From IMG/VR virus record IMGVR_UViG_3300008110_010000, positions 1 to 64,000 of that record: a DNA stretch of 64,000 bases; one strand, given 5' to 3'. The position numbers were made by a program, and so were the translations under genes. A model generated the notes under the pieces. That model made no database searches. It was not told the origin of the DNA and was given only the letters and a program-made list of their open reading frames with translations. This document shows positions 30,116 to 57,783 of the stretch, in pieces (within the stretch, counting starts at the first letter, position 1; each line of letters starts with the position of its first letter).

Positions 30116-31494
30116 ATTATTTTTTTATAAAATTCCTCAAATTCTGGAAAAACCTTCAAAAAATTGGTGCCTCTTCTTTTATCGTGATTGTCTACAAAAA
30201 TTCGGAAATCCCTCCTGTTCTGTAATAAGGTCTCTTCAGGTTCTTCCGTTACCATCCAATCATGAATTCTATTTAACTTATTGATTTCGATGTCGGTATA
30301 TCCAAATCCATCAAGACCAACTCTTATTTGTTCGTAGAAGTCCATTAGCTGAGCTTGCTCTTTTACTACTGCAGACCATTCCTTATCTAATATTTTCACT
30401 GTCTGGTGTGGAGGCCACCTTAAATAGGACGAGTCTAACATAATAGAGGAGCCATAGTATCTGTGAGGGTTGTGATATTCTTCCTTAAGCTTTACCACAT
30501 TTTCTATTAACTTTTCATAATTAGGAACGGAAAGTGCGTTATATGTGGACATTATTATTACGGTCAGAGGCTCAATTTCTTTCAATAGAAAATTAACTCT
30601 ATCCCACCATTGGTTGAAGACCAAACCATGTCTAATGTATTCAGCTTGTTCTCCCCAGGTATCTGCACTGGTAAATAGTATCACCTCGTTTACCCTGTTC
30701 TCGTCTATCATTCTTTTTAATTTTTCTACCATTAGATTAAAAAGCTTATCTGGTGCTCCTAAATTCGTATTGAGAGAAAAATTTAAATTTCTGTTTGGGT
30801 TTTTTTCATCCAAGATATAATCAAAAACCTTAAAAGTGTCTTTAGACAGAAGAGGTTCCCCTCCCGTTATTCTAAAAGTATGAAGATCTCTGTATAAATC
30901 AGGCCACCATTTCCAGAAAGCCTCAACGTATGGGTTCTCCTGATTATGCGGTCTTGGGATCATGTTCAGATCCTTCAAATATTCTAAATTGTTAAATCTA
31001 AAGCTGGTAGGATATGGTCCATGCTGCTCTATTTCTTGAACCCATTGGGAAGAGAACGACGGTCCACAATACGAGCATTTAAAATTACAGTGATTACTAA
31101 AAGCTACCTCAACATACTTAGGATTGTAATTTTCTTTCCACCCTAAATCTTTTATTTCATTAAAATATGGGGCAGACCAGGGTTCAGAAGATTTATAAAT
31201 TCTATCGGAAAATGCATTTGATGTATCTTCTATATTCCAGCAATAATCGCATTCATCTGGTCTTTTACCATGAAGCATTTTTCTTCTCTGCTGCTTTTTA
31301 TAAACTGTATTATGTAGAGCAGATGGGTTTTTTTCTAACTCTGATAGTGGGATATGATGCGTGCCTGGATGGTGACACGAATGTGTTTGTCCCATTTGTA
31401 AATGAAGTGTTACTTGAGTCCATTTTGCTAAACAAAAGCCACATCCAACATCGTTTAATTTATTTCTAGTTTTGTCGAAAAATTCGTTTAGCAT
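30112..31494 (-). CDS. Radical SAM protein with twitch-like N-terminus
   Basis: FCLAKW..SCHH; CNFKCSYC; TGGEPL; close paralogue of 27901-29460. Confidence 0.85.
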   Translation of the reverse strand: MLNEFFDKTRNKLNDVGCGFCLAKWTQVTLHLQMGQTHSCHHPGTHHIPLSELEKNPSALHNTVYKKQQRRKMLHGKRPDECDYCWNIEDTSNAFSDRIYKSSEPWSAPYFNEIKDLGWKENYNPKYVEVAFSNHCNFKCSYCGPSFSSQWVQEIEQHGPYPTSFRFNNLEYLKDLNMIPRPHNQENPYVEAFWKWWPDLYRDLHTFRITGGEPLLSKDTFKVFDYILDEKNPNRNLNFSLNTNLGAPDKLFNLMVEKLKRMIDENRVNEVILFTSADTWGEQAEYIRHGLVFNQWWDRVNFLLKEIEPLTVIIMSTYNALSVPNYEKLIENVVKLKEEYHNPHRYYGSSIMLDSSYLRWPPHQTVKILDKEWSAVVKEQAQLMDFYEQIRVGLDGFGYTDIEINKLNRIHDWMVTEEPEETLLQNRRDFRIFVDNHDKRRGTNFLKVFPEFEEFYKKII

Positions 31495-32801
31495 TATAGT
31501 AATCTTTTTTTAATTATCGGATTGAGACTCTCCAAACAAATTAGATCGTTTGGTAAATTTCTGTGTTTTGAATTATTTGCAATCATTAAATCGTGTCTTT
31601 CTTTATGATTTACCCATGGATTATCTCCAAATAATCTTATATGTTCATTTATACTCGATATAAATATCTTCGATTCAAAGTCGTCGTTATCTAAAATAAA
31701 CTCTGGAAGATGATACGAATTAACAAACGGAACAATGTAATCATAATTTCTCCTGAGAATTGATTCAAAGCTATTTTTTATATTCGCTCCGTCAAGTAAT
31801 ATACATCCATTCTTGACGTAGAATATTATATTCTTTTTACTATCCTTTAAAATATTTAAAATTATTTGGGATTCTAAATCTTCCGATGATGTGTCCAAGA
31901 AAACATATTCATATTCAAAATGATCAGTAATCATGCTTCTGAGCGTCTCCTTGCTGTTTTTTTCGATCACAAAATATCTAAGATTTTTAAATTTATTTTT
32001 ATAAAAGTTTAGGGTAGTTTCCAAAACCCCTCCATAATTTTCTTCAGTTCCATCTACCGAAACAAAAGCACAGACCTCAGTAGAGATGCACGGTATGTCT
32101 TCATATGGTGGATAATGATTGTCTCTAAAATTTACTAGCTGTTTATAAAGAGAATTTGATATGGTTGAAGGAAATTCGCAGTTTGATAACGCAAGGCCAA
32201 AAACAGCTCCCTCTCCTCTTAAATCATCATCAGCCTCCTTCGCTACCTTTTTTCTAAGCATCGAATAAAATTCATAGGTTTCAAACAATTTGTCTATCTT
32301 TTCTTCGTCAATACCCTCGAAATTAAAATACATTAAATCTTCCCATGGAGTAACTGTATTTCTAAATTCAACATTATTTTTTATCAGCTCATCTTTAAAT
32401 TTTCCAAGTTTTGGATTCGTTTCTAATAAGGCTTTGAAATGTATGCTTGTAAATCTGTTGTATGAAAATCCTGGATTAAAATTCTTAGAAATAATATCAT
32501 TTATGAATTCTTCAGAATTTATCAATATCAGATCAGAATCCATATAAAGTATTTTATTATACCCCCTTTTTCTTACCTGGTTAATGAATATAAATTTGCT
32601 ATGAAAATCAAAGGTTGTGGAAAAATCGTGCTTTATTATTTCAACCCCTTCCATGTCTTTGAATTCTGACACATTATCGGTGTAAACAAATATTTTAAAA
32701 GATCCACTATCAGTGAAATTCTTTATTAAAAATTTGCAGCAGGTATAATAATACTCAGTATTAGAAGCAATTGTCGCTATTGCTATTTTATTTTCCATCA
32801 T
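31494..32801 (-). CDS. Putative glycosyltransferase-like protein
   Basis: YTDN, LYMDSD (DxD) in the N-half; GT2-like C-half. Confidence 0.5.
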   Translation of the reverse strand: MMENKIAIATIASNTEYYYTCCKFLIKNFTDSGSFKIFVYTDNVSEFKDMEGVEIIKHDFSTTFDFHSKFIFINQVRKRGYNKILYMDSDLILINSEEFINDIISKNFNPGFSYNRFTSIHFKALLETNPKLGKFKDELIKNNVEFRNTVTPWEDLMYFNFEGIDEEKIDKLFETYEFYSMLRKKVAKEADDDLRGEGAVFGLALSNCEFPSTISNSLYKQLVNFRDNHYPPYEDIPCISTEVCAFVSVDGTEENYGGVLETTLNFYKNKFKNLRYFVIEKNSKETLRSMITDHFEYEYVFLDTSSEDLESQIILNILKDSKKNIIFYVKNGCILLDGANIKNSFESILRRNYDYIVPFVNSYHLPEFILDNDDFESKIFISSINEHIRLFGDNPWVNHKERHDLMIANNSKHRNLPNDLICLESLNPIIKKRLL

Positions 32802-34244
32802 TTATGCTTTGCAATTAATCAGAAGGGTATTGTTGAATACCTCTTTAGTAGAGACTAACTCGTACTTCATACTGTTGAATCCCTCACTTTTATAGTTTAT
32901 ACATTTCCTTTGCATTTCAGTTACGAACCTTTTTTCATTTCTTGCTGTTGTTTCCCCCTTTGCCCACTTATTATTTACTAGCCCTTCGTCAATGTGTGGT
33001 AAACACTCGAAAGATCCTTCTCTCCTATAAGGAATTGGCATGTCGCTAACCTCGATGGAATCTTCAACGATTTCTAAATTATAAGCCTTAGCTTTAATTC
33101 CACTCATTACGTCTTCGATTTCTCCATTTTCTATCAAATCAAATTTAAAATGCAGAACTGGCTTATGTTTTAAATCGTGAAATTTAGTAACATCTCCTGG
33201 AATTTTTACTGCCTTATCAAAAATCATTAATTCTGCAATTTCACCTCTAAAAAATAATGGATTTTCCTCGTCGCCGTTATATCCCACGATAGATTTTTCT
33301 TTATCCCTATACTGAAATAAATCATTATTTATTATTGTAGATTTATTTTCTTTGATTCCTTTTTCGTTAGATCTTGCTAGTTCGTCATTTAGAAAAAAAT
33401 TAAAGTGACCACTTGAAGAATCATAAGATGTTGTTACCCAGGACCAAACACCATCATCCCTCTTGATCCAATTATAGATCTGGGATGATGAAAAATCTGA
33501 AATCATGCTAGTAACAGCTCTGGAGTTGTTAAAAGATATGCAGTACGGACTATATGATTGCTTTCGGAAAACCGGAAATTCTATGAATTTTTTGTCATCC
33601 GTTCCTATTAGCCAATCTTTATATTTTTCAGGTTGTTGTTCTGCTTTAAATAAAGCACATACCGTATGATCTGATCCCAGTATTTTGTTTATGGATTTTA
33701 TCCATGGGATTTCAACATATGAGTTGTCTCCATTAAATCTTGAAAATTTTCTTTTTTTATATTTTTTATAAATCCTTTTTTCAACATATCCTTCGAAATA
33801 ACATCGATAAAAAAGGTCGTCATCTTCCATACCCCAATCCCAATAATCATTAGAATATCCGTTAGTTTTTATAACTTGATCCTTAGTAAATAGAATTACC
33901 CCACCGAAGTATTGTTCATAATTTAGTTTGAAATCGTACTTCGAAAGTTTTGTTGCTATATGAATTGGATATTTTTCCGGATATGAATAGTCACAATCAT
34001 CGGAGAATGGCACCATATCAACGTCATGCCATGCAATATAATCACATCCATCATCGAAGGCAAACTTGGCTGCTATGTTTTTCATTAGTCCCCTATTAAA
34101 CAGCTTATTATCCACCTGATGGGCCACATAAAATTTATGATCTATTCCACGATTTTTTAGATACTCCCCCAGGTCTTCAGTTAGCTTCTGTAAGTGATCG
34201 AATCTATTTCTGTAAGGTATGCAAATTCCCAGTTTATGACTCAT
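32802..34244 (-). CDS. GT7 galactosyltransferase-like protein with inserted LamG domain
   Basis: IPYRNR, FNRG, WHDVD, YFGG, NGYSNDYWDWGMEDDDL; LamG-like FRGEIAELMIFD inserted before the C-terminal segment. Confidence 0.8.
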   Translation of the reverse strand: MSHKLGICIPYRNRFDHLQKLTEDLGEYLKNRGIDHKFYVAHQVDNKLFNRGLMKNIAAKFAFDDGCDYIAWHDVDMVPFSDDCDYSYPEKYPIHIATKLSKYDFKLNYEQYFGGVILFTKDQVIKTNGYSNDYWDWGMEDDDLFYRCYFEGYVEKRIYKKYKKRKFSRFNGDNSYVEIPWIKSINKILGSDHTVCALFKAEQQPEKYKDWLIGTDDKKFIEFPVFRKQSYSPYCISFNNSRAVTSMISDFSSSQIYNWIKRDDGVWSWVTTSYDSSSGHFNFFLNDELARSNEKGIKENKSTIINNDLFQYRDKEKSIVGYNGDEENPLFFRGEIAELMIFDKAVKIPGDVTKFHDLKHKPVLHFKFDLIENGEIEDVMSGIKAKAYNLEIVEDSIEVSDMPIPYRREGSFECLPHIDEGLVNNKWAKGETTARNEKRFVTEMQRKCINYKSEGFNSMKYELVSTKEVFNNTLLINCKA

Positions 34245-35647
34245 ATTCCTACGTTAATTTCTGTTATATTTCCCTCTCTTTTTCTTCCGTGATCTGTGTA
34301 CTTTAGATCCGATAATCCGTCTCCAAATAAAAGATTGCTGTTATTTCTTACCTCGTTATAGAATCTTAATTGATTCCATCTAGTTGCTTTATCCTTCCAT
34401 CTATTTTCGAAGAAACCATTTTGCTCATGTTTCATGGATTTAAAGATAGAATCCCTTCTGATCGGAAGGTCTATTTTTTTAAACCAAGGACCTTCCATAT
34501 CAACAATTTCACATTTGAAAATACTAGCATCGTTTCCGTTTCCTGAAAGATCTACTAACTTATAATTTTCTATGTGCTCTGCATCATAGTGACAAAGAAT
34601 GGATCCGGATTTTTTATATTCCGAAAAGTCGTTTGTTGCTGAAACAGATTTAACTTCATTTTCACTTAAAATTCCTTCTAAGACTACCAAAGAATCTATG
34701 TACCCCTTGAAAAAATTAGGATCTCCATTTCTTTTAGGATTTCCTGCACCGATAAAGAAATACTTTTCGTCTGAATAATCCTTTAATTCTCCCTCCCAAT
34801 TTGTTTTTCCTATATGTTCTCCGTCTTGATAGAAATTTATTTCTCTCAACGATTGATTTAATGTGATACAAATATTTGTTTGATAATTAGTAGTTATTTC
34901 TGTGTTTATGTATGATGCTTTTTCTTCGGAGTTGAATGTAACAAAATTGTATCTCTTGAATGAATTATAGGAAATTGCAGTGTCATACCCCGGAATGCTA
35001 AAAACCGTATAAACATCAAGATCCTTCGTTGAATCATAAACCAATTCATCGGGGAAAAAAGATGCAAATAATGTTAGATCCTTGTCTATGCAAAAATTAT
35101 TTTTTGCTCTCACAAAAGAATCCTGTCCGTTAAATTTTAGTGATTTATGGAAATTTCTTGTTTTTTTGATGTAATAAGGCTCTGTGCCTATGCTCTTGTT
35201 TTTGCATCTTAGGAAAAGGTCATCATCTTCAAATCCCCATCCCCAATACTTATTTGAATATCCGTTTATCTTTTTGAAATCTTTAATCGGAAACATAGTG
35301 ACCCCGCCGAAGTATTCGTCGAATGGCTTTGATCTTTCCCCCGAGTCCTCGTCCTCTATTAGAGTTGCAAGATGAACTGGATGATCACAGTAAGAATAAT
35401 CAACATCCAATGGCAGCAAATCAACATCATGAAAAACCACATAATCACATCTTAAGTTTCTGGCACACTTAAATCCTATATTTAATAGCATCCCTCGATT
35501 AAATTGCTTACCGTCGTCTTGATTTACGATGATAATTTCATGTGGTATTTTTTCCTCGTTTAGATATTTTACTATCTCCTTGAGAAAAAAATAAAGATGT
35601 TCCCCTCTGTGGCGGAAAGGAACTATGACTCCTAGTTTTTTATCCAT
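34241..35647 (-). CDS. GT7 galactosyltransferase-like protein with inserted LamG domain
   Basis: VPFRHR, FNRG, FHDVD, YFGG, WGWGFEDDDL; FKGYIDSL...DLSGNGNDA. Confidence 0.8.
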   Translation of the reverse strand: MDKKLGVIVPFRHRGEHLYFFLKEIVKYLNEEKIPHEIIIVNQDDGKQFNRGMLLNIGFKCARNLRCDYVVFHDVDLLPLDVDYSYCDHPVHLATLIEDEDSGERSKPFDEYFGGVTMFPIKDFKKINGYSNKYWGWGFEDDDLFLRCKNKSIGTEPYYIKKTRNFHKSLKFNGQDSFVRAKNNFCIDKDLTLFASFFPDELVYDSTKDLDVYTVFSIPGYDTAISYNSFKRYNFVTFNSEEKASYINTEITTNYQTNICITLNQSLREINFYQDGEHIGKTNWEGELKDYSDEKYFFIGAGNPKRNGDPNFFKGYIDSLVVLEGILSENEVKSVSATNDFSEYKKSGSILCHYDAEHIENYKLVDLSGNGNDASIFKCEIVDMEGPWFKKIDLPIRRDSIFKSMKHEQNGFFENRWKDKATRWNQLRFYNEVRNNSNLLFGDGLSDLKYTDHGRKREGNITEINVGI

Positions 35648-37532: not shown

Positions 37533-38321
37533 ATGGAAAAGAAGCAAAAAATATTGACTATAGGGGACATTCACGGGAGGGATTACTGGAAATTCATTAC
37601 CCATGGTAGTAGTTACGAATTTGAGCAGTGGGTAACCATGGTGAATGCTGGGGCTAATCCCATGGACGATTTGTTTAAAGAGGATTATCCTTATTTTTCC
37701 GCAGACAAGATAGTTTTTGTTGGTGATTACGTTGACAGTTTCACAATTAGTAATGTTGAGATCAAGAAAAATCTTGAGGATATCATTTTCTTTAAAAAGA
37801 CACTACCAAATAAGGTAGTGCTTCTCTGGGGAAATCACGATGTTCAGTATTTTATTCCCAATCAAATCTGTAGCGGATATCGTCCAGAGGCAAGATGGGA
37901 TCTACAGATTCTTTTTGAGAGCAATAAAGATCTTTTCCAGATGGCATATCACGAGGGTGATTATCTTTGGACTCATGCTGGTTTATTAAAGCCAGTATTA
38001 AGTGATCTTTTAAAACATCATCCGGATCTAAAGGAACTTGGTAATGAGGCAGCTATTTTAAACGAGGCATTTAAAATGGAACTCCCCCAAATTTTTCAGG
38101 TGGACGGTGCCAGTGGGGGATGGAGCATGTACGGGGGACCGCTCTGGGTTAGGCCAAATCAGCTTCAAGAATATGGAGTAGACCTGCATCAGATAGTAGG
38201 ACACACCCCGGTTTCAGAATTGAAGAATTTAAAAAATAAAAGAGACTATAACATCTGGCTCACAGATTATTTAGAATATAGCTTGGGCGAAGGACTTGAT
38301 CCCTTAACTTTAGAAATATGA
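37533..38321 (+). CDS. Calcineurin-like metallophosphoesterase
   Basis: GDIHG, GDYVD, GNHD, THAG, GHT. Confidence 0.9.
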   Translation: MEKKQKILTIGDIHGRDYWKFITHGSSYEFEQWVTMVNAGANPMDDLFKEDYPYFSADKIVFVGDYVDSFTISNVEIKKNLEDIIFFKKTLPNKVVLLWGNHDVQYFIPNQICSGYRPEARWDLQILFESNKDLFQMAYHEGDYLWTHAGLLKPVLSDLLKHHPDLKELGNEAAILNEAFKMELPQIFQVDGASGGWSMYGGPLWVRPNQLQEYGVDLHQIVGHTPVSELKNLKNKRDYNIWLTDYLEYSLGEGLDPLTLEI

Positions 38322-38602
38322 TATCGAAAAAAACGAAAGAAAGGGCAAAACAAATTATGAATGGAACATATGTACCTCCAGAGCCAGAAAAGATAGCGGT
38401 TACTTTTGAGGTCACTGAAAAACAATATAAAAAATACAAAAGGTGGAGAAATGCTAAGAAGAAAAAAGAAGGGGAGCTTTACGTCGGAGCAATCGGAGGA
38501 GCATACACTTTTTGTTTTACTGCAACAGGAATAGGTGAAATAGTAACTGTGAAAGCAGCAGACGGAGATGAGTTAGATTTAACAGATTATAATACTTGGT
38601 AA
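38318..38602 (+). CDS. Hypothetical protein
   Basis: 94 aa ORF overlapping the upstream stop (ATGA). Confidence 0.6.
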   Translation: MISKKTKERAKQIMNGTYVPPEPEKIAVTFEVTEKQYKKYKRWRNAKKKKEGELYVGAIGGAYTFCFTATGIGEIVTVKAADGDELDLTDYNTW

Positions 38603-38603
38603 T

Positions 38604-39209
38604 ATGAAAGTGATATTTTTAGACAATGACGGAGTAATTTGCCTTTCCAATAATTGGGGATCACGACACAAGAAGCAAAAAAAATGGGGTGGTAGGAAAC
38701 TATCTATGACTACTCGTGAAATGCCCCTTGAATATAGATTTGATAATTTTGATAAAAAAGCAATTAAAATCTTAAATGAAATTCTAGAACAAACTGGAGC
38801 TGAAATTGTAGTGAGCTCCGATTGGAGATTGTATGCGGATTTAGAGGAGTTGGGGAAATACTACACATCCCAGGGTATTATCAAAAATCCTATAGGAGTA
38901 ACTGAAATATTTCACCATAAAAATTGGGTAGAAGAAGGTAGAATACCCCCAGATTTTGATTGGTACAGAATCGAAGATAGGGAGCAAGAAAGGCACTTCG
39001 AAATTCTGGAATGGCTAAAGAAGAATCCGGAGGTTACTCAATGGGTAGCTGTGGATGATTTACACATGGGGATTCACGTCGAAGCAAGTTCTTATGGAGC
39101 ATTCGATAGAGATTGGGGATTGAAAAATTTTGTATGGACTCCCAGAGCCTGGGAAGGAATTAAACAGTCAGGAATCAAAAAAAAGATTTTAAAATTTTTA
39201 AACAACTAA
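38604..39209 (+). CDS. HAD phosphatase of the Swiss-Army-Knife RNA repair-like type
   Basis: FLDNDGVI, IVVSSDWR, WVAVDDL. Confidence 0.75.
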   Translation: MKVIFLDNDGVICLSNNWGSRHKKQKKWGGRKLSMTTREMPLEYRFDNFDKKAIKILNEILEQTGAEIVVSSDWRLYADLEELGKYYTSQGIIKNPIGVTEIFHHKNWVEEGRIPPDFDWYRIEDREQERHFEILEWLKKNPEVTQWVAVDDLHMGIHVEASSYGAFDRDWGLKNFVWTPRAWEGIKQSGIKKKILKFLNN

Positions 39210-39212
39210 AAA

Positions 39213-39422
39213 ATGGAATACGTAATCGCAATTGGAATAAGCTTCGGACTTGCTGCTATCATAGCATTTTTCTGGGTAAGAGGAATTGATAATATGCAGA
39301 AGAATTATCCAGACTATAAAGGGGAAGACTTCCTAAATTGGAACGAGAAGGAAATAGACGATGAATTTAGCAGACAATCCAAACAAAATAACAAAAAACA
39401 AAATCATGAAGGAGATCTTTAG
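39213..39422 (+). CDS. Small membrane protein
   Basis: N-terminal hydrophobic helix. Confidence 0.55.
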   Translation: MEYVIAIGISFGLAAIIAFFWVRGIDNMQKNYPDYKGEDFLNWNEKEIDDEFSRQSKQNNKKQNHEGDL

Positions 39423-39753
39423 AAAAGCATTTAGTGTTAAATCATTAGAACCTTTTGTTGTGGGTATTAGTGTAATTCTATTATTAGAATTTGCAATTTT
39501 TCCCGCTCTTACAATTGCCAACACTTTTTTGAATCTATTAGGAGGAGGATTAGGTGTGGGACTTGTGATATTTCTTTACGAATATGTAAAGAAAAAAATT
39601 CATAATGTTATACCTGATGAACTGCCAGAAGGGGAAACTGAATTGGATTATGTCAACCCAGAGGAACTAAAGCCTAAGAGAAAAAGAAATCCTAAGCAGT
39701 TTCCCGAGGTAAAAAGCGAAGGACCTTTTATAAAAACTAGAAAAAATAAATAA
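39406..39753 (+). CDS. Two-TM membrane protein
   Basis: Two hydrophobic segments; start set at MKEIF. Confidence 0.55.
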   Translation: MKEIFRKAFSVKSLEPFVVGISVILLLEFAIFPALTIANTFLNLLGGGLGVGLVIFLYEYVKKKIHNVIPDELPEGETELDYVNPEELKPKRKRNPKQFPEVKSEGPFIKTRKNK

Positions 39754-39754
39754 T

Positions 39755-40666
39755 ATGGGACTTTATGATAACGATTATCAGGCTCTAAGACAAAAAGAGC
39801 GTGAAGAAGAAAAATTAAAACAACAATTAAAAATTAAAAAAATGATTAAAACAATCGGAGTTGCAGTTGCAGGATTTTTTCTGCTAGTATTTTTATTCAT
39901 GTCTTGCGAAAGAATTGATGCTGGACATGTTGGGGTGAAAGTTAATCTTTACGGAGACAATAAAGGGGTAGATGATGTTGTGGAAGTTACTGGGATGGTT
40001 TTTTATAATCCATTAACCCACAACATTTACGAATTTCCTACATACGTCCAGCACAAAGAATACGTTGGGGATAATTCATTTATAGTTAACTCTAAAGATG
40101 GTTCAGAATTTCACGTGAGCCCGATTATTAACTATTCAGTTAAAAGAGAGATGGTACCAAAGATTTTTTCTAAGTATAGAAGAAATCTAGAAAGTATCGA
40201 AGAAGGATTTTTGAAGACCGCAGTATTTGATGCCTTTAGATTAGCAACAAACGTATACACTGCAGATGAGTTAATAGGCAACAGACAGAAATTTGAAGTA
40301 GAGGTCAGAAGAATTCTCGAAGATCAACTAAATAAAGAGGGATTCTACATTCAGCAATTTACGTCAAACCTAGTTTATCCTGAAACATTCAAGAAAGCTA
40401 TCGAGGCAAAGAACAATGCTGTTCAATCAGCTTTAATGGCAGAAAATAAAGTTAAACAAGCTGAAGCAGAGGCTAAAATCAAAGTAGCTACTGCGGACGG
40501 TAACGCTCAAGCGATGTTAACATCAGCTAAAGCTGAAGCTGAAGCCAATAGACTGAAGCAGCAAACAATCACCCCGATGTTATTACAATTGGAATGGATT
40601 AATAAGTGGGACGGAAAGCTACCAGTATATGGACAAGCACCTATGCTTTATAAACCAGTACAATAA
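39755..40666 (+). CDS. SPFH/Band 7 (prohibitin-like) protein
   Basis: TM segment, IDAGHVGVKV, KAIEAK, Ala/Glu coiled coil, WINKWDGKLP. Confidence 0.85.
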   Translation: MGLYDNDYQALRQKEREEEKLKQQLKIKKMIKTIGVAVAGFFLLVFLFMSCERIDAGHVGVKVNLYGDNKGVDDVVEVTGMVFYNPLTHNIYEFPTYVQHKEYVGDNSFIVNSKDGSEFHVSPIINYSVKREMVPKIFSKYRRNLESIEEGFLKTAVFDAFRLATNVYTADELIGNRQKFEVEVRRILEDQLNKEGFYIQQFTSNLVYPETFKKAIEAKNNAVQSALMAENKVKQAEAEAKIKVATADGNAQAMLTSAKAEAEANRLKQQTITPMLLQLEWINKWDGKLPVYGQAPMLYKPVQ

Positions 40667-41801: not shown

Positions 41802-42183
41802 GGGGGTGTATTTGGCACTTGACAGACATTGGTAGTTCTTTGAGATGATGCAGGCCGAGTTAGTATTGGAAACTCGTTAATCACCTATGCAAACAATAAA
41901 CGACGTAGAATTATCTACAATGACCTTCGAAGACGCTATGTCTTTCGTTGGTGCTGATTACGCAATAGCTGCCTAATCCCTCCCGCACACATCGTGGGGC
42001 TTAAAATAGAATGTGAACCCAGGTGGAATATGACTGAACCCGAAATCGAGTCATCTGAATTTGGTAGTTTAATCAGCCAACTATAAACTACATATTTTGT
42101 TTGTAAAGAAAAACAAGCTAAGCCTGTGAATGAGTTTCTTTTAACAGATGGACTGGACACCGGTTCGATTCCGGTCACCTCCA
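41802..42183 (+). ncRNA. ssrA: tmRNA
   Basis: GGGGGTG/CACCTCC acceptor stem with G3-U70, T-arm GGTTCGATTCC, internal frame 41902-41976 ending YAIAA*. Confidence 0.92.
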
Positions 42184-42199
42184 CAAAAATTAATTTAAT

Positions 42200-43770: not shown

Positions 43771-43847
43771 TTTCTGAAAATTTTTCTTTTTATCTTCTAT
43801 AATCTAAAACAAAAGGAATATATAAAAATTCCTAGATCTTTAAACAT

Positions 43848-43922
43848 TGCGGGGTAGAGCAGTGGTAGCTCGCTGGGCTCATAACCCAGAAGTCGTGGGT
43901 TCGAATCCCACCCCCGCTACCA
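43848..43922 (+). tRNA. tRNA-fMet (CAT)
   Basis: Cloverleaf, GGG/CCC anticodon stem, 1:72 mismatch, encoded CCA. Confidence 0.9.
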
Positions 43923-43932
43923 AAAAGAAGTT

Positions 43933-44040
43933 GGTAGCAAACTTGTGTATGATACGTTCCGGCTTCGATTGATAATCGAAGGTATCAAAAAGGAAGACGT
44001 CTCCGAGGTCTAATTCCCGCAAGTCCCTGCTACCTTTTTT
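43933..44040 (+). ncRNA. Candidate three-way-junction structured RNA, unassigned
   Basis: ggtagca/tgctacc, acttgtg/cgcaagt, gatac/gtatc, cttcgatt/aatcgaag, ggaa/ttcc, then a T tract. Confidence 0.5.
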
Positions 44041-44076
44041 ATTGTAACCATTTCGTTATTCAATCGTATAATATGC

Positions 44077-44850
44077 ATGAGCAAAAATTTGGTAATTTAT
44101 TTAAATGTCTTTGATGACATATCAAAGACAGCACAAAGTGTAGAATCGATTAGAAGAGCATGTCATCGATGGGGTGCTAATTTTTACGAGGTGACAAACG
44201 TTCAGTATCCAAATGCACCTTATCCCTTTCTCTGGGAAACCCTTGCAGCTTTTGAAGAGTTCAATCACTATGATAAAATTTTAAATTTGGATCATGATAT
44301 CATCATAAATTCTAATGCTCCAAACATATTTGAGGAATTAACAGATGAATATGATTTTTGTGCTGTTAGAGACGGGAATCCGGGAGGAAGATTTCCTCAT
44401 AATGATGGATTTCTAAGAGATTCTATTATAAAAACAATTAGTCACGATCAAAATTGCTTTGATCTTTTTCATAGTGTTTTAAAGAATTTTAATTATGAAA
44501 AATACTGGCAAAATTATTTTAATTTAGGTGTCTATCTATTTAACCCCAAAAAATACAATCGATTGATTAAAGAAATCAAGCAATTGGCTTTTGATGACAA
44601 AAGAGTTTATCAAATGCTTATGGGACAGGGATTTCCTTGGCACGCATTACAGAATTTTTTTAATGCTTACATATCTTCCTCCGATCTTAAAATTAAATTA
44701 ATTGACAATACTTGGAATTGGATTATGCCAGATATATCCGAGGAATATCACGATGATTTTTATCTGGGAAAAATGAAACCAAACATCTATCATTTCTGTG
44801 GAACCCCAACATCAAAGGAGGACCTTCCTTTTTATGACAGATGGAAATAA
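44077..44850 (+). CDS. GT8-like glycosyltransferase
   Basis: LNLDHDII, APNIF, YFNLGVYLFN, LQN..N, YHFCG. Confidence 0.7.
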   Translation: MSKNLVIYLNVFDDISKTAQSVESIRRACHRWGANFYEVTNVQYPNAPYPFLWETLAAFEEFNHYDKILNLDHDIIINSNAPNIFEELTDEYDFCAVRDGNPGGRFPHNDGFLRDSIIKTISHDQNCFDLFHSVLKNFNYEKYWQNYFNLGVYLFNPKKYNRLIKEIKQLAFDDKRVYQMLMGQGFPWHALQNFFNAYISSSDLKIKLIDNTWNWIMPDISEEYHDDFYLGKMKPNIYHFCGTPTSKEDLPFYDRWK

Positions 44851-51146: not shown

Positions 51147-54100
51147 ATGGCAAATTATAGAATTTTAGGACAAGAAACTGTTAACAATTCGGTAAGTCCG
51201 GGACCTACCCTTGTAACACTTTATACGGTTCCTCAAAATGCTTCCATTCTAATCAATGCAATAACCGGATATAATGAGGGATTTAATAGTGGATATCTTA
51301 CCGTTGCAGTAAAAAGGAACGGGGACGAGGACTATTCTCCAGATCAAATTGTTATAAATACTCCCTTAGCACCCGGTGCTTCAATACAAATTTCTCCTCA
51401 ATTTTCTCCTGTTGGTTTAACTGCCGGCGACGTAATACTTTTAGTTGGTAATTATTCTCCTGCCCCTACAACAGTAGCGGTAACCTTATTCGGTGAAGAC
51501 GGGGCTTCTAGCGGTGGATCCGGCAATGCAGGAACATCCGGAACTTCAGGAAACAGTGGGGGCTCAAGTACTTCAGGAAGTAATGGTACTAGCGGGACTT
51601 CGGGAACTAATGGATCTACAGGAACTGGTGGTACTAGTGGTACCTCTGGAATGAACGGATCTATCGGAACTAATGGTACGAGTGGAACCTCAGGTGAAAC
51701 CTTCGGAACTAGTGGAACGTCAGGGGCAGCTGGTGCTCCTGGAGCAGCGGGATCTTCTGGAACATCTGGGGTTTCCGGAGCATCTGGTTCTTCTGGAACC
51801 TCTGGGGTTTCCGGAGCATCCGGTTCTTCCGGAACATCGGGAAATTCAGGTTCTTCTGGAACATCTGGGATTTCCGGGGCATCTGGTTCTTCCGGAACAT
51901 CAGGAAATTCGGGATCCTCTGGTACATCAGGAAATTCGGGAACCTCTGGTACTTCGGGAGAATCTGGTTCTGCTGGTACATCCGGATCATCTGGAACATC
52001 AGGAAACTCCGGGTCATCCGGTACATCAGGAAACTCCGGGTCCTCCGGTACATCAGGAAATTCGGGAACCTCTGGTACTTCTGGGGAATCTGGCTCTTCT
52101 GGAACATCAGGATTCTCTGGGTCCTCCGGAACATCAGGAAACTCCGGGTCATCCGGTACATCAGGATCCTCTGGAGAACCCGGTTCTGCCGGAACATCGG
52201 GATCCTCAGGTACATCTGGTACATCAGGAAACTCCGGGTCATCCGGTACATCAGGGTCATCCGGTACATCAGGGTCCTCTGGTACATCTGGTGCTGATGG
52301 TACATCCGGTTCTTCCGGAACCTCGGGAAACCCTGGATCATCAGGGACCTCTGGAACATCAGGAAACTCTGGATCATCGGGGACCTCCGGATCCGCTGGA
52401 ACTTCTGGTTTAAGCGGAATATCTGCAGGACAGATTTATTATTTTAACCAATCTCAGTCTTCTGACATTTCTCCATATAAAGTCCTTAGTGTTTACCCAT
52501 CAGGAGCTGCTGAACAAACAGTTCCTATGGTATTAACGGGCGGGCAATTGAATGTTCTGGTAAGTCAATTCCTGACCCCCGAATTGGGATTTGCTGTAAT
52601 TCCACCAGGCACTCAGAGATTTCATCTGCATTTTTTAAAACAACAGTTTAATGATGACATAGATGGCTATGTTACCATAGAACTTGCAAATTCGTCAGGT
52701 GTAGGATATGGCACTATTATTCAATCAAACAAAGCTTTAATTGGATGGGTGAGTGTTTCTCAATCTTATGAGCTGTTGGTTGATATTGTTTTACCTTCAG
52801 TATACATAAACACCACAGACAGAATGATTGTCAAGGTTTACGTTGACAATAATGAAGCAACCGTCAGAAATTTAACTTGGTACACAGAGGGGGCTCAAAA
52901 CTATTCATATGTAATCACATCGGTTGGAGCAATTGTAGCAAGCTCTGGAACGTCAGGGAGTTCTGGAACTAGTGGATCAAGCGGAACTTCGGGATCCGGG
53001 GGTTCATCAGGAACTAGCGGATCTAGTGGATCGGAGGGAACTTCAGGTAGCTCTGGTACTTCCGGCAGTTCTGGAACCTCTGGAGAAGATGGAACTTCAG
53101 GTAGCTCTGGTACTTCCGGCAGTTCTGGAACCTCTGGAGAAGATGGAACTTCGGGATCTGGGGGTTCATCAGGAACTAGCGGATCTAGTGGATCGGAGGG
53201 AACTTCAGGTAGCTCTGGTACTTCGGGAACCTCTGGAGAAGATGGAACTTCAGGTAGCTCTGGTACTTCGGGAACCTCTGGAGAAGATGGAACTAGTGGA
53301 TCTTCAGGTACATCAGGAACCTCGGGGGTGTGCGAGTGTCCACACAGCTACACTATCACGGCTCCAACGGATATCACGTGTTACTCTTTAACAAATGACG
53401 GAGATCCCGACAACGTAAATAGTACAAACTATCTCGATTGTAACGGGAATCCTGCGGTCATTTACAATAAAATTTTTCTCACACCAGCTACTTATTTCTG
53501 TGCTCAGACCGGATCTGTTACAACTGATTCGGGGCTCACTGTAATATCAGTACCTGATGATCCTGGATCTTGCGACGGATGTTGCGATGGATATGCTTAT
53601 TCTTATACCGACGAAACAGATACTATCATAAGTGGAATCATATATGACGGAGAATCTCTAACTTTCTGTGCGATCCCAGGATCTGTAGTTTGGTCCCATA
53701 CAATAGTAGACAATGGGCATTGTGTAGGAAGTTCAGGTACTTCCGGCAGTTCTGGTTCGAATGGTACGTCAGGTAGCTCTGGTACTTCCGGCAGTTCTGG
53801 ATCTTCTGGGACATCAGGAACTGATGGTTCCTCCGGTAGTACAGGTACTTCTGGTTCTTCCGGCAGTTCTGGATCTTCTGGGACATCAGGAACTGATGGT
53901 TCCTCCGGTAGTACAGGTACTTCTGGATCCTCAGGGTCATCTGGAACTTCCGGAACTGATGGATCTTCAGGTACATCAGGTAACTCTGGTTCTTCTGGAA
54001 CCTCAGGATCAGCAGGTACATCAGGAAATGAGGGTCCCCCTGGATCTTCGGGAACGTCAGGAATTGATGGAACCAACGGATCGACAGGTTCTTCTGGAAC

Positions 54101-55778
54101 CTCAGGAAACTCTGGTTCTTCAGGTACTTCAGGTACTTCAGGTAGTTCTGGTTCAACTGGTACTTCAGGTAGTTCTGGTTCTTCTGGAACCTCTGGTTCT
54201 TCTGGTTCAACTGGTACTTCAGGTACTTCAGGTACTTCCGGTAGTTCTGGTTCAACTGGTACTTCAGGTAGTTCTGGTTCTTCTGGAACCTCAGGAAACT
54301 CTGGATCTTCTGGAACCTCTGGAGCATCAGGATCTTCTGGAACCTCAGGAAACTCTGGTTCTTCTGGAACCTCTGGAGCATCAGGTAGTTCTGGTTCTTC
54401 TGGAACCTCTGGAGCATCAGGATCTTCTGGAACCTCAGGAAACTCTGGATCTTCTGGAACCTCAGGAAACTCTGGATCTTCTGGAACCTCTGGAGCATCA
54501 GGATCTTCTGGAACCTCAGGAAACTCTGGATCTTCTGGAACCTCTGGAGCATCAGGATCTTCTGGAACCTCTGGAGCATCGGGAGCTAATGGATCTTCTG
54601 GAACCTCTGGAGCATCAGGATCTTCTGGAACCTCTGGAGCATCAGGAGCTAATGGATCTTCTGGAACCTCTGGAGCATCAGGAGCTAATGGATCTTCTGG
54701 AACCTCAGGAAACTCTGGTTCTTCTGGAACCTCTGGAGCATCAGGAGCTAATGGATCTTCTGGAACCTCAGGATCTTCTGGAACCCGAGGTTCCTCAGGA
54801 ACTTCAGGAGCTTCCGGTGGAAACGGAACATCCGGAACTTCAGGAGCTTCCGGGGGAAGCGGAACATCCGGAACTTCGGGAGCTTCTAGTTCAGCAATAT
54901 CTAGTAATAACATCGACAACTATGTTGTTACCATGACTGGAAACAATTCCACGCCTTTCCAAGGGGAGCCTAACTTAACATTCGATAATACGAGACTTTT
55001 TGTAACTGGGAAAGTAAGGGTTTATCAAAATCCATTAAGCATAAGTTCAGGAAGTCTTTCTTGGCCTTTAAGATCTGGAGCAAATGCAACAGTTACTTTA
55101 AATCAAAATGTAACTACGTTTACACTTAGCGAATTTGAAGCTGGAGATACTGGGGTATTAATAGTAAAACAAGATGCTACTGGAGGTAGAACAATGGTAC
55201 TTCCCTCTAGTTCACAAGTAGTTGGAGGAGGATCTTATACCCCAACATCCGCTGCAAACTCACAAGACGTTCTTGGAGTTTACTACGACGGAACAACATA
55301 TTTCTGGACCATTGGGCTCGCTAGTGTTACAGGTAACTTACTTACAATAAACAATAATGCAGATCACAGAATATTGACTGCAACTGGTAGTGCTACTTCG
55401 ATAGACGGAGAAACAGGATTGACTTATAACAGCAGTACATTAGCAGTAACTGGAGCAATCACAGCAACAGGAGATATCACTGCTTATTCATCTTCGGATG
55501 AAAGATTAAAGGATAATATTTCGGTTATTCAGGATGCTTTGGAAAAGGTCTCTAGCATAAGAGGAGTGGAATTTGATTGGAACGACAAGGCTCATGAAGT
55601 TAATAGAGGTCACGATCTTGGAGTAATTGCTCAAGAGCTGATTAAAGTTCTTCCTGATGCAGTTAAAGAAAGAGAAGATGGATATTATGGGGTAAGATAT
55701 GACAGAATTATACCTCTTCTCATAGAGGCTATAAAAGACTTAAGAAAAGAAATAGAAGAACTTAAAAGAGAAAAATAA
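51147..55778 (+). CDS. Tail fibre-like protein with G/S/T repeats and C-terminal peptidase S74 chaperone
   Basis: Three GTSGSS repeat blocks; SSDERLKDNI...GVIAQE...YDRIIPLLIEAIK at the C-terminus. Confidence 0.85.
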   Translation: MANYRILGQETVNNSVSPGPTLVTLYTVPQNASILINAITGYNEGFNSGYLTVAVKRNGDEDYSPDQIVINTPLAPGASIQISPQFSPVGLTAGDVILLVGNYSPAPTTVAVTLFGEDGASSGGSGNAGTSGTSGNSGGSSTSGSNGTSGTSGTNGSTGTGGTSGTSGMNGSIGTNGTSGTSGETFGTSGTSGAAGAPGAAGSSGTSGVSGASGSSGTSGVSGASGSSGTSGNSGSSGTSGISGASGSSGTSGNSGSSGTSGNSGTSGTSGESGSAGTSGSSGTSGNSGSSGTSGNSGSSGTSGNSGTSGTSGESGSSGTSGFSGSSGTSGNSGSSGTSGSSGEPGSAGTSGSSGTSGTSGNSGSSGTSGSSGTSGSSGTSGADGTSGSSGTSGNPGSSGTSGTSGNSGSSGTSGSAGTSGLSGISAGQIYYFNQSQSSDISPYKVLSVYPSGAAEQTVPMVLTGGQLNVLVSQFLTPELGFAVIPPGTQRFHLHFLKQQFNDDIDGYVTIELANSSGVGYGTIIQSNKALIGWVSVSQSYELLVDIVLPSVYINTTDRMIVKVYVDNNEATVRNLTWYTEGAQNYSYVITSVGAIVASSGTSGSSGTSGSSGTSGSGGSSGTSGSSGSEGTSGSSGTSGSSGTSGEDGTSGSSGTSGSSGTSGEDGTSGSGGSSGTSGSSGSEGTSGSSGTSGTSGEDGTSGSSGTSGTSGEDGTSGSSGTSGTSGVCECPHSYTITAPTDITCYSLTNDGDPDNVNSTNYLDCNGNPAVIYNKIFLTPATYFCAQTGSVTTDSGLTVISVPDDPGSCDGCCDGYAYSYTDETDTIISGIIYDGESLTFCAIPGSVVWSHTIVDNGHCVGSSGTSGSSGSNGTSGSSGTSGSSGSSGTSGTDGSSGSTGTSGSSGSSGSSGTSGTDGSSGSTGTSGSSGSSGTSGTDGSSGTSGNSGSSGTSGSAGTSGNEGPPGSSGTSGIDGTNGSTGSSGTSGNSGSSGTSGTSGSSGSTGTSGSSGSSGTSGSSGSTGTSGTSGTSGSSGSTGTSGSSGSSGTSGNSGSSGTSGASGSSGTSGNSGSSGTSGASGSSGSSGTSGASGSSGTSGNSGSSGTSGNSGSSGTSGASGSSGTSGNSGSSGTSGASGSSGTSGASGANGSSGTSGASGSSGTSGASGANGSSGTSGASGANGSSGTSGNSGSSGTSGASGANGSSGTSGSSGTRGSSGTSGASGGNGTSGTSGASGGSGTSGTSGASSSAISSNNIDNYVVTMTGNNSTPFQGEPNLTFDNTRLFVTGKVRVYQNPLSISSGSLSWPLRSGANATVTLNQNVTTFTLSEFEAGDTGVLIVKQDATGGRTMVLPSSSQVVGGGSYTPTSAANSQDVLGVYYDGTTYFWTIGLASVTGNLLTINNNADHRILTATGSATSIDGETGLTYNSSTLAVTGAITATGDITAYSSSDERLKDNISVIQDALEKVSSIRGVEFDWNDKAHEVNRGHDLGVIAQELIKVLPDAVKEREDGYYGVRYDRIIPLLIEAIKDLRKEIEELKREK
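51507..52420 (+). repeat. GTSG/SSG low-complexity coding repeat, block 1
   Basis: 9/18/27-nt period units such as tcttctggaacatc. Confidence 0.9.
52941..53328 (+). repeat. GTSG repeat block 2, with EDGTSG units
   Basis: Near-exact duplications such as gggggttcatcaggaactagcggatctagtggatcggagggaac and tctggagaagatggaact. Confidence 0.9.
53727..54890 (+). repeat. GTSG repeat block 3
   Basis: Many near-identical ggatcttctggaacctc units. Confidence 0.9.
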
Positions 55779-57086: not shown

Positions 57087-57173
57087 GGAGGCTTGGCAGA
57101 GCGGTCGAATGCGGCAGTCTTGAAAACTGCTTTACGGGTAACTGTAACCGGGGTTCGAATCCCTGAGCCTCCG
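57087..57173 (+). tRNA. tRNA-Ser (TGA)
   Basis: gcagt-cttgaaa-actgc anticodon arm, long variable arm, G73. Confidence 0.92.
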
Positions 57174-57178
57174 CAATT

Positions 57179-57251
57179 GCCTCCTTAGCTCAGCTGGTAG
57201 AGCGACGCACTTGTAATGCGTAGGTCATTGGTTCGATCCCGATAGGAGGCT
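57179..57251 (+). tRNA. tRNA-Thr (TGT)
   Basis: acgca-cttgtaa-tgcgt. Confidence 0.92.
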
Positions 57252-57322
57252 CGATACTAACGTAAAACTTGTACACTAACATAATCCTTGTTAGCGTACA
57301 AAAAGTTCGTTAGCAGTCAAAT

Positions 57323-57409: not shown

Positions 57410-57414
57410 CACAT

Positions 57415-57520: not shown

Positions 57521-57526
57521 CCTTTT

Positions 57527-57709: not shown

Positions 57710-57783
<74 letters not shown>

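What the first reader, a model, noticed from the sequence alone, without database searches (positions are those of the whole stretch)
43933..44040. Unassigned three-way-junction RNA co-transcribed with tRNA-fMet
Seen: a closing helix of 7+7 bp, a second arm (5 bp + 7-nt bulge + 8 bp), a third arm (ggaa-gac/gtc-ttcc) and a 3' U tract. It is notably more GC-rich than the flanking intergenic DNA and begins about 10 nt after the CCA. I cannot match it to a known family; a 6S-like, Y-like or riboswitch RNA is possible.
Basis: partly seen in the sequence, partly recalled or inferred. Interest (0 to 1): 0.6.

Follow-up and report, generated by a model that had tools for sequence, protein, structure and literature searches.

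The report
New small phage RNA beside tRNA-fMet
A 102-base, three-armed RNA gene sits directly after the initiator tRNA in a few uncultivated freshwater jumbo phages, is kept by selection, matches no known RNA family, and occupies the genomic slot where related phages carry the giant GOLLD RNA.

Summary
Window 43933-44034 folds into a 7+7 bp closing stem, a bulged arm and a second hairpin, followed by T6 (z = -3.65). The window is the start of a 219-kb jumbo-phage record, probably with a Bacteroidota host.

I found five further sequence variants in related freshwater phage contigs (89-98% identical; neighbouring genes about 70-86%). All stem substitutions keep pairing except at the loop-closing pair 38-42. 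Four pairs show compensatory double changes. Stem H1, arm B and all bulge and junction bases are invariant.

The element always lies 9-12 nt after an initiator-type tRNA-Met, or a remnant of one, and always ends in T6-7. The genes on either side differ between contigs.

No Rfam family matches it: not Y RNA/YrlA, 6S, any riboswitch, any ribozyme, pRNA or GOLLD. It is not a tRNA. The held genome has no TROVE/Ro gene. Twenty-six related phage records lack the element. Nine of them carry GOLLD, and in the four whose loci I read it lies downstream of tRNA-fMet.

Best reading: a discrete small stable RNA gene (promoter, tRNA-fMet, RNA, terminator) acting in trans through its invariant unpaired surfaces. 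Expression is untested and the function is inferred. It is a new family of tRNA-island-linked phage RNA.

The parts
43774..43803 (+). Promoter-like site (CTGAAA, 18-nt spacer, TATAAT) about 45 nt upstream of the tRNA
   Evidence: Consensus scan; the scan as a whole was not enriched over shuffles. The same TTCTGA...TATAAT block and the following GGAAT...ATTCC palindrome are conserved upstream of the tRNA in L239 and L335. Function is inferred.
43848..43922 (+). Initiator-type tRNA-Met (anticodon CAU) with encoded CCA
   Evidence: ARAGORN; Rfam tRNA model at 70.4 bits. The GGG/CCC anticodon stem, A11:U24 and U1xU72 mismatch are read from the sequence.
43923..43932 (+). A-rich single-stranded spacer ending in GUU; the likely processing site between tRNA and element
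   Evidence: Alignment A3: the spacer is 9-12 nt and A-rich in all homologues, and GTT before H1 is invariant. Cleavage is inferred.
43933..43939 (+). H1 5' strand (GGUAGCA)
   Evidence: Fold; invariant in 6 distinct homologues.
43941..43947 (+). H2 5' strand (ACUUGUG)
   Evidence: Fold. Pair 13-88 changes G-C to A-U. Pair 14-87 is seen as U.G, C-G and U-A.
43950..43987 (+). Arm A: 6-bp outer helix, invariant 7-nt bulge GUUCCGG (43956-43962), 8-bp inner hairpin with a variable loop (43971-43973)
   Evidence: Fold. Compensatory changes at pairs 20-53, 21-52 and 38-42, and A-U to G.U at pair 36-44.
43988..43991 (+). Junction strand AAAA (invariant)
43992..44017 (+). Arm B: GGAA/UUCC plus GAC/GUC with a 3-nt bulge (U/A)AA and a 9-nt apical loop; invariant except the first bulge base
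44018..44024 (+). H2 3' strand (CGCAAGU)
44025..44027 (+). Invariant CCC bulge between H2 and H1
44028..44034 (+). H1 3' strand (UGCUACC)
44035..44040 (+). T6 tract, the putative intrinsic-termination signal that uses H1 as its stem
   Evidence: T6-7 follows H1 directly in all six variants. Sequence conservation stops shortly after it. The simple terminator scan does not call it because the 'loop' is a whole three-way junction.
44067..44072 (+). TATAAT box 4 nt before the start codon of the next gene (GT8, 44077-44850); a possible own promoter of the downstream gene
   Evidence: Conserved as TATAAT 4-5 nt before ATG in L239, L232 and L324. TATATA follows the element in L190, directly before its first ATG, and in L335, tens of bases before the IscA-like start. 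Inference only.

Best explanation
The element is a discrete gene for a small (about 105-110 nt) structured RNA of a subgroup of freshwater jumbo phages. Proposed mechanism, with shown and inferred steps marked:

1. Inferred: transcription starts at the conserved promoter-like site upstream of tRNA-fMet, or upstream of the tmRNA where tmRNA, tRNA and element are contiguous.
2. Inferred: host tRNA 3'-processing enzymes cut in the A-rich 9-12 nt spacer and free the element's 5' end.
3. Inferred from sequence: transcription ends at the T6-7 tract, with the closing helix H1 acting as the terminator stem. The mature RNA therefore has paired ends that protect it.
4. The secondary structure is shown by covariation. 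That the RNA adopts a rigid three-way-junction fold is inferred.
5. Inferred: it acts in trans through its invariant unpaired surfaces (bulge GUUCCGG, junction UA/AAAA, arm-B loop, CCC bulge), most likely by binding a protein or another RNA of the translation or RNA-quality-control machinery. It travels with tmRNA and initiator tRNA.

It belongs to the set of tRNA-island-linked phage RNAs and fills the position that GOLLD fills in related phages.
For: - The fold is much more stable than shuffles.
- Six distinct variants come from independent metagenomes: L190, L232 and L239, L324 and L335-L348. They are 89-98% identical to the window element. The IscA-like gene is only 70% identical, other neighbours 69-86%, and the tmRNA about 85%.
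- 98.6% of pair cells are standard pairs and 4 pairs carry compensatory double changes. The covariation score is 0.105 against 0.055 for shuffles (0 of 500 reach it). Slid controls pair at 45% or less.
- Conservation begins at GTT before H1. Apart from about 16 bases shared with the closest variant L232, it ends at the T tract.
- T6-7 is always present.
- The unit of tRNA plus element stays together while its flanks differ. Upstream it has a 322-aa gene, a tmRNA, another tRNA-Met or a truncated tRNA. Downstream it has GT8 or IscA.
- A promoter-like block upstream of the tRNA is conserved in the window, L239 and L335.
- No ORF of 50 aa or more overlaps the element.
- Relatives carry another stable RNA, GOLLD, downstream of tRNA-fMet. 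That arrangement is documented for GOLLD (bioRxiv 10.1101/2024.12.08.627333).
Against: - There is no expression data. All 20 holding runs are DNA, so neither a transcript nor its ends are shown.
- H1 and arm B never vary, so their pairing has no covariation support.
- The family is narrow and shallow, with six variants all at least 89% identical.
- No partner protein is identified, and no neighbouring protein gene is consistently linked.
- A three-way junction closed by a 7-bp helix is an unusual intrinsic terminator.
- In L324 the upstream tRNA is truncated, so coupling to a functional tRNA-fMet is not obligatory.
Confidence: 0.55

Rival explanations
1. The element is a purely cis-acting 3' module of the tRNA-fMet (or tmRNA-tRNA) transcription unit. 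On this reading it is an elaborate intrinsic terminator or insulator and 3'-end protector. It stops the strong stable-RNA promoter from reading into downstream genes, shields the precursor from exonucleases, and has no trans function.
For: H1 is followed directly by T6-7 in every variant. The element always lies at the end of the stable-RNA unit and before a gene with a TATAAT or TATATA box of its own. The flanking genes differ, as expected for a generic punctuation element.
Against: A terminator needs only a GC-rich hairpin. Here about 40 unpaired or loop-adjacent bases and the whole of arm B are invariant, while the IscA-like gene is only 70% identical and other neighbours 69-86%. Related phages with the same tmRNA and tRNA-fMet do without it. 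The terminator scan does not recognise it.
Confidence: 0.2
2. The element is a riboswitch-like or attenuator leader. A ligand-binding or factor-binding three-way junction stabilises P1 (H1), which doubles as the terminator stem. This controls read-through from the tRNA promoter into the downstream genes.
For: It has the architecture of a compact aptamer: P1 plus two arms of similar height, invariant junction and bulge bases, variable peripheral loops and covarying stems. The T tract lies immediately after P1. In L190 the next ORF starts within about 10-30 nt of the T tract.
Against: No riboswitch family matches, even at E up to 10. The downstream gene is not constant: GT8 sugar-modification genes in the window, L232, L239 and L324, and an IscA-like gene in L190 and L335. 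A TATAAT box lies between the element and the downstream start codon. No conserved alternative (antiterminator) pairing exists, because the complementarity between the tRNA 3' end and the H1 5' strand seen in the window is imperfect in L190, L232 and L239. The junction is very small (2, 4 and 0 nt).
Confidence: 0.12
3. The element is a self-cleaving ribozyme that trims the tRNA 3' trailer, analogous to the theta (HDV-like) ribozymes or hammerheads found next to phage tRNAs.
For: It sits immediately 3' of a phage tRNA, as theta ribozymes do (PMC10879173, listed). It is a three-way junction with invariant junction bases.
Against: No hammerhead, HDV-like, twister, twister-sister, pistol or hatchet model matches at E up to 10. 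The junction strands (UA, AAAA, none) do not fit the hammerhead core. The covarying helices are fully nested, which does not fit the HDV double pseudoknot.
Confidence: 0.05
4. The high conservation reflects recent horizontal spread of a small DNA cassette (tRNA 3' end plus element) by recombination at tRNA genes, rather than selection on an RNA function.
For: The L232 element is 98% identical to the window's while its tRNA and flanks are very different. L324 keeps only the 3' 42 nt or so of the tRNA fused to an ORF, which is typical of recombination within tRNA genes. Gene blocks have been inserted on both sides of the unit in the window relative to L190.
Against: Mobility does not explain why the substitutions that did occur in stems are compensatory. 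No integrase, homing endonuclease or repeat flanks the unit. The element is single-copy in the genome. This reading is compatible with, and not exclusive of, an RNA function.
Confidence: 0.06

Closest known systems
Phage T4 stable RNAs rnaC and rnaD (species 1 and 2 RNAs)
   Same: They are small stable RNAs of unknown function encoded directly after a tRNA in a phage tRNA cluster, on the same strand and a few bases apart. In T4, tRNA-Arg, rnaD and rnaC are separated by 1 nt and 6 nt (annotation).
   Different: There is no sequence or structure similarity: model R2 gives 8.7 bits or less on the T4 region. rnaC contains a tRNA-like T arm, and rnaD folds no better than shuffles. The element here is a three-way junction with its own U-tract end.
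GOLLD RNA (Rfam RF02032)
   Same: It is a phage-encoded structured RNA in tRNA islands, documented downstream of Met-tRNA. In the four related phages whose loci were read, which share the tmRNA tag, it lies 0.7-1.1 kb downstream of the same tRNA-fMet. Five further relatives carry it but its position was not read. The element occupies the equivalent slot.
   Different: GOLLD is about 800 nt and forms 14-mer nanocages. The element is 102 nt, does not match RF02032, and has no local sequence similarity to the tRNA-to-GOLLD regions of relatives.
Bacterial Y RNAs / YrlA (Rfam RF00019, RF02553) with Ro (TROVE) protein
   Same: Both have a long stem made by the 5' and 3' ends, interrupted by small bulges (1 nt on the 5' strand and 3 nt on the 3' strand), a 3' U tract, a size of about 100 nt, and a distal structured module.
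   Different: No covariance-model match. There is no tRNA-like T/D module. No TROVE gene is found in the 219-kb record.
phi29-family packaging RNA (pRNA, Rfam RF00044)
   Same: The topological order is the same: a 5'/3' helix with bulges, a three-way junction, a first arm carrying a 5'-side bulge loop below a hairpin, and a second hairpin arm. The bulge (CGG) and the arm-B loop (CCG) are complementary over 3 nt, reminiscent of the pRNA interlocking loops. This comparison is from my own knowledge of pRNA and is not a database result.
   Different: No Rfam match. Three complementary bases are expected by chance and do not vary. The genome is a myovirus-like jumbo phage (baseplate wedge protein), not a phi29-like podovirus.
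Purine-type three-way-junction riboswitch aptamers
   Same: Both have P1 plus two side-by-side arms of similar height, with a possible contact between them, and invariant junction bases.
   Different: No family match. The junction is tiny. The downstream genes are variable and a TATAAT box lies between the element and the next gene.

Membership tests
Y RNA / YrlA (Ro-associated) | Match to the family covariance models (RF00019, RF02553) | tested here: not met
   No hit on the element at E up to 10 in the window or at E up to 5 in L190 and L324. The only YrlA hit (25 bits, cut-off 69) lies on the tmRNA/tRNA, not on the element.
Y RNA / YrlA (Ro-associated) | A Ro/TROVE protein encoded with it | tested here: not met
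   PF05731 finds nothing in the 219-kb record, while the controls respond. The record is estimated 79% complete, and a host Ro cannot be excluded.
Y RNA / YrlA (Ro-associated) | Terminal stem with the bulged Ro-binding helix, and a 3' U tail | tested here: inconclusive
   A 7+7 bp stem with 1-nt and 3-nt bulges and U6 is present. The Ro-binding sequence consensus was not testable beyond the failed model match.
6S RNA (including 6S-Flavo) | Covariance-model match, and a long rod with a central bubble | tested here: not met
   No Rfam hit. The fold is a 102-nt three-way junction.
Known riboswitch classes | Match to an aptamer model and a consistent regulated gene family downstream | tested here: not met
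   No Rfam hit. The downstream gene is GT8 or IscA-like depending on the phage.
Self-cleaving ribozymes next to phage tRNAs (theta/HDV-like, hammerhead) | Conserved catalytic core and fold (HDV double pseudoknot, or hammerhead CUGANGA/GAA core) | tested here: not met
   No model match. The helices are nested and covarying, and the junction strands are UA, AAAA and none. Cleavage itself is not testable here.
GOLLD RNA | Match to RF02032 (the conserved 3' domain) | tested here: not met
   No hit in the window or in the whole record. Relatives score 257-317 bits.
GOLLD RNA | Location in phage tRNA islands, often after tRNA-Met | tested here: met
   The element lies 10 nt after tRNA-fMet. GOLLD lies downstream of the orthologous tRNA in four relatives, and the published context agrees.
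phi29 pRNA | Match to RF00044; interlocking complementary loops; phi29-like packaging motor | tested here: not met
   No Rfam hit. Only a 3-nt invariant complementarity exists. The genome is of the jumbo myovirus type.
tRNA / tRNA-like | Cloverleaf with a T loop and D arm | tested here: not met
   ARAGORN finds nothing credible on the element, even with introns allowed and relaxed thresholds. The Rfam tRNA model hits only 43848-43919.
T4 rnaC/rnaD-type tRNA-cluster RNAs | Encoded directly after a phage tRNA, on the same strand | tested here: met
T4 rnaC/rnaD-type tRNA-cluster RNAs | Sequence or structure homology | tested here: not met
Intrinsic terminator | GC-containing stem immediately followed by a U tract | tested here: inconclusive
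   H1 (7 bp, 4 G-C) is followed by T6-7 in all variants. The stem encloses a whole three-way junction, so the consensus scan does not call it. Termination was not assayed.

The most novel reading that the evidence does not exclude
The element is a small self-assembling phage RNA. Its invariant arm-A bulge (CGG) and arm-B loop (CCG) would pair between molecules, as the interlocking loops of phi29 pRNA do. That would build a ring or cage-like homo-oligomer that substitutes functionally for the GOLLD nanocage carried at the same genomic position by related phages.
Probability: 0.06. Interest if true: 0.85.

Novelty: new variant of a known kind. Interest (0 to 1): 0.5.

Why it matters
Phage tRNA islands are known to carry enigmatic structured RNAs, including T4 rnaC/rnaD, GOLLD and ROOL, and the function of these is still unknown. 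This locus adds a small, tractable member to that set. It is a 102-nt RNA with a well-defined secondary structure and sharply invariant surfaces, and it sits where close relatives carry GOLLD. If the two are functional alternatives, a 100-nt RNA would be a far easier handle than an 800-nt RNA that assembles into 14-mer nanocages for asking what these tRNA-linked phage RNAs do. It also shows that initiator tRNA, tmRNA and an extra RNA travel as one stable-RNA unit in a widespread clade of freshwater jumbo phages.

Tried and rejected
- **Rfam.** Searches at gathering and at permissive thresholds on the window and on homologues found nothing on the element.
- **tRNA test.** Relaxed ARAGORN runs (introns, low thresholds, mitochondrial mode) showed it is not a tRNA.
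- **TROVE.** A search of the whole record found none.
- **Paralogues.** None in the 219-kb record by blastn or by covariance model.
- **Isolated phages.** The INPHARED blastn matched only the tRNA.
- **Flank proteins in IMG/VR.** This returned only identical contigs plus one distant GT8.
- **Other phage tRNA-Met genes.** About 119 phage loci with a U72 tRNA-Met 3' end had no element.
- **Tiling patterns in IMG/VR.** Three patterns found only the window phage and two chance hits: L134 lies inside a DNA-polymerase gene and L147 in GC-rich coding sequence.
- **Metagenome pattern scan.** The random matches included some microbial contigs from human-gut metagenomes. These were only passed through the model, gave nothing and were not pursued. 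No contig was taken to be human.
- **Prokaryote species genomes.** The arm-B 19-mer gave 20 chance hits in GC-rich genomes, all at 19.4 bits or less.
- **Related phage records.** Twenty-six records sharing the tmRNA tag have no element.
- **Remnant of GOLLD.** Rejected, because there is no local similarity above shuffles.
- **Regulatory alternative hairpin.** Pairing of the tRNA 3' end (GCUACCA) with the H1 5' strand is not conserved in L190, L232 or L239.
- **Pseudoknot search.** A search among unpaired segments found only 3-nt complementarities.
- **RNase P P4 resemblance.** CCGGCUU and AAGUCC resemble the two strands of the P4 helix. I considered this and set it aside. The order is permuted, the pairing would break helices that covary, and 102 nt is too small for an RNase P RNA.
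- **T4 rnaC/rnaD.** Not homologous.
- **Sequencing runs.** Only DNA runs hold the locus, so expression could not be assessed.

Full report
**What the window is.** The window is the first 64 kb of an IMG/VR virus record of 219,355 bp (linear, CheckV 79% complete, 35% GC). It encodes a tmRNA (41802-42186) and 14 tRNAs in the window, plus 7 more tRNAs just beyond it. It also has many sugar-modification and radical-SAM genes. A baseplate wedge protein has its nearest cultured relatives among phages of Prevotella (Lak), Tenacibaculum, Chryseobacterium and Flavobacterium. It is therefore a jumbo phage, and a Bacteroidota host is likely by inference. Near-identical DNA occurs in freshwater and lake metagenomes from 14 studies, all of them DNA libraries.

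**The observation.**
- H1 pairs 43933-39 with 44028-34.
- H2 pairs 43941-47 with 44018-24.
- Arm A spans 43950-87 and is 6 bp, the bulge GUUCCGG, 8 bp and a triloop.
- The junction strand is AAAA.
- Arm B spans 43992-44017.
- A CCC bulge is followed by T6 at 44035-40.

The fold energy is -36.8 kcal/mol against -24.1 +/- 3.5 for dinucleotide shuffles (z = -3.65). GC content is 46.5% against 35% for the genome. The upstream tRNA (43848-43922) is of initiator type and its CCA ends 10 nt before H1.

**What it is not.**
- No Rfam 15 family matches the element, at gathering thresholds or at E up to 10. The same holds in two homologues. This covers Y RNA, YrlA, 6S, 6S-Flavo, SRP, all riboswitches, all small ribozymes, pRNA and GOLLD.
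- ARAGORN with introns and relaxed thresholds finds no tRNA in it.
- The record has no TROVE/Ro gene.
- The element is single-copy.
- No ORF of 50 aa or more overlaps it.

**Homologues.** IMG/VR holds only the window phage. Laying contigs of four DNA runs on the locus showed a 467-nt contig that aligns only to 43928-44040, at 93% identity. Its differences lie in the arm-A loop plus one U-A to U.G change. This first showed that diverged copies exist.

A pattern scan of metagenome contigs, filtered with a covariance model, gave three homologues:
- L190 (Ga0315905_10449530)
- L232 (SXGQ01431859.1)
- L239 (JACCDW011640642.1)

Looking up contigs that encode relatives of the two flanking proteins gave L324 and the L335-L348 group from Logan assemblies. 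In all there are six distinct sequences, 89-98% identical to the window element. For comparison, the tmRNA is about 85% identical, the IscA-like gene 70% and other flanking genes 69-86%.

**Structure support.** On the 6-sequence alignment A5, 98.6% of pair cells are standard pairs. Four pairs show changes on both sides:
- 13-88, G-C to A-U
- 20-53, A-U to U-A
- 21-52, U-A to C-G
- 38-42, U-A to C-G

Two further pairs change through wobble intermediates. The covariation score of 0.105 exceeds all 500 column shuffles, whose mean is 0.055. Sliding the partners by 1-3 columns drops pairing to 28-45%.

This supports H2 and both helices of arm A. H1 and arm B never vary, so they are neither supported nor contradicted. 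The bulge GUUCCGG, UA, AAAA, the arm-B loop and CCC are all invariant.

**Context.** In every homologue the element starts 9-12 nt after an initiator-type tRNA-Met and is followed by T6-7. The surroundings differ.
- L190: tmRNA, 6 nt, tRNA-fMet, 9 nt, the element, then an IscA-like gene.
- Window and L239: a methyltransferase gene and a 322-aa gene have been inserted between the tmRNA and the tRNA. A block of sugar-modification genes, about 6 kb in the window and shorter in L239, has been inserted between the element and the IscA-like gene.
- L232: the element is preceded by a very different tRNA-Met.
- L324: only the 3' 42 nt or so of the tRNA survive, fused to an ORF, yet the element is intact.

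A promoter-like block (TTCTGA, then TATAAT, then a short palindrome) is conserved upstream of the tRNA in the window, L239 and L335. A TATAAT box lies 4-5 nt before the next start codon in the four GT8 loci. A TATATA box follows the element in L190 and L335. Sequence conservation starts at GTT before H1 and stops at the T tract, apart from about 16 further bases shared with L232.

The simplest reading is one transcription unit: promoter, tRNA-fMet, small RNA, terminator. The RNA's own closing helix would serve as the terminator stem. This reading is inferred and not shown.

**Relatives and GOLLD.** A degenerate pattern for the tmRNA tag peptide retrieved 26 further IMG/VR contigs of the same phage clade. 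None contains the element, including four records estimated at 94-100% complete. Nine of the 26 carry GOLLD RNA (RF02032, 257-317 bits). In the four whose loci I read, GOLLD lies 0.7-1.1 kb downstream of the orthologous tRNA-fMet. GOLLD downstream of Met-tRNA in phage tRNA islands is a published arrangement (bioRxiv 10.1101/2024.12.08.627333). The window phage has no GOLLD or any other Rfam RNA besides tRNAs and tmRNA. The element shows no sequence similarity to the tRNA-to-GOLLD regions of the relatives. It is therefore not a GOLLD remnant but a different RNA in the same slot.

**Mechanism.** I commit to a discrete small stable RNA that acts in trans (0.55). The secondary structure, the purifying selection and the linkage to tRNA-fMet are supported by data. 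The promoter, the processing in the A-rich spacer, termination at the T tract and the trans action through the invariant surfaces are inferred.

Two tertiary contacts are geometrically plausible. The arm-A bulge lies 6 bp above the junction. The arm-B loop lies 7 bp above it, and the CCC bulge 7 bp below it. CGG of the bulge could pair with CCG of the arm-B loop, or GG of the bulge with CC of the CCC bulge. None of these bases varies, so neither contact can be tested here.

The rivals are:
- a purely cis-acting terminator or insulator (0.2)
- a riboswitch-like attenuator (0.12)
- a self-cleaving ribozyme (0.05)
- conservation due to cassette mobility alone (0.06)

**Comparison with known systems.** By position, the element works most like the T4 tRNA-cluster RNAs rnaC and rnaD and like GOLLD. 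By architecture, it resembles a Y RNA stem or the phi29 pRNA. It fails the membership tests for all of these. It is best filed as a new family within the known kind of tRNA-island-linked phage RNAs of unknown function.

**Limits.**
- No RNA data exist for this locus.
- The homologue set is small and shallow.
- The records behind L190, L232 and L239 could not be searched whole.

Noticed in passing
window 41802-42186 (+): A phage-encoded tmRNA with tag DVELSTMTFEDAMSFVGADYAIAA. At least 26 other IMG/VR contigs (17-271 kb) share an almost identical tag, which defines a large clade of freshwater jumbo phages with big tRNA arrays.
   Followed up: partly
L290 314-728 (-), L270 2810-3221 (-), L278 6933-7342 (+), L285 4369-4778 (-); also G005, G006, G014, G016, G020: GOLLD RNA (RF02032, 257-317 bits) is present in 9 of 26 related phage records. 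In the four loci read, it lies downstream of tmRNA and tRNA-fMet.
   Followed up: partly
L270, L272, L281, L285, L290, within about 90 nt after tRNA-fMet: A conserved palindromic motif (TTTACAAA ... GGAAATGTGAAAATGTTTTCG ... TTTGTAAA) precedes the GOLLD region in relatives. It may be a phage promoter/operator or a processing hairpin.
   Followed up: no
L278 about 5945-6010 (+) and L285: A different structured segment of about 65 nt, with an 8-bp closing helix GAGUAAGU/ACUUACUC followed by an A tract, lies after tRNA-fMet in two relatives. It is not similar to the element.
   Followed up: no
L324 480-526: Only the 3' 42 nt or so of the tRNA-fMet remain (anticodon-stem 3' strand, T arm and acceptor 3' strand), fused in frame to a 104-aa ORF. 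This is evidence of recombination inside the tRNA gene.
   Followed up: partly
window 44067-44079; L239, L232, L324 equivalents: A TATAAT box lies only 4-5 nt before the start codon of the GT8 gene and is conserved in four phages. It may indicate a leaderless mRNA, next to a phage-encoded initiator tRNA.
   Followed up: no
window 43916-43939: The tRNA 3' end GCUACCA is perfectly complementary to the H1 5' strand UGGUAGC, and the H1 3' strand CCCUGCUACC resembles the tRNA 3' end CCCGCUACC. The complementarity is imperfect in L190, L232 and L239, so it is probably not functional.
   Followed up: yes
window 57087-63972 and G000 64002-66096: A tRNA array of about 20 genes, interrupted by short ORFs.
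   Followed up: no
window 37533-40666: Adjacent genes for a calcineurin-like phosphoesterase, a HAD domain of 'Swiss Army Knife' RNA-repair proteins (PF18143) and an SPFH/Band 7 protein lie just upstream of a GMP reductase/IMPDH gene and the tmRNA.
   Followed up: no
window 51147-55778 (+): A 1543-aa protein with collagen triple-helix repeats (7 matched stretches) and a C-terminal endosialidase-chaperone (Peptidase_S74) domain, probably a tail fibre.
   Followed up: no
window 19445-35647 (-): A run of radical-SAM/SPASM enzymes and GT7-type galactosyltransferase-like genes. One carries a Laminin_G_3 domain.
   Followed up: no
window 13606-15480 (-): A 624-aa protein with a C-terminal Hint/intein-like domain.
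   Followed up: no
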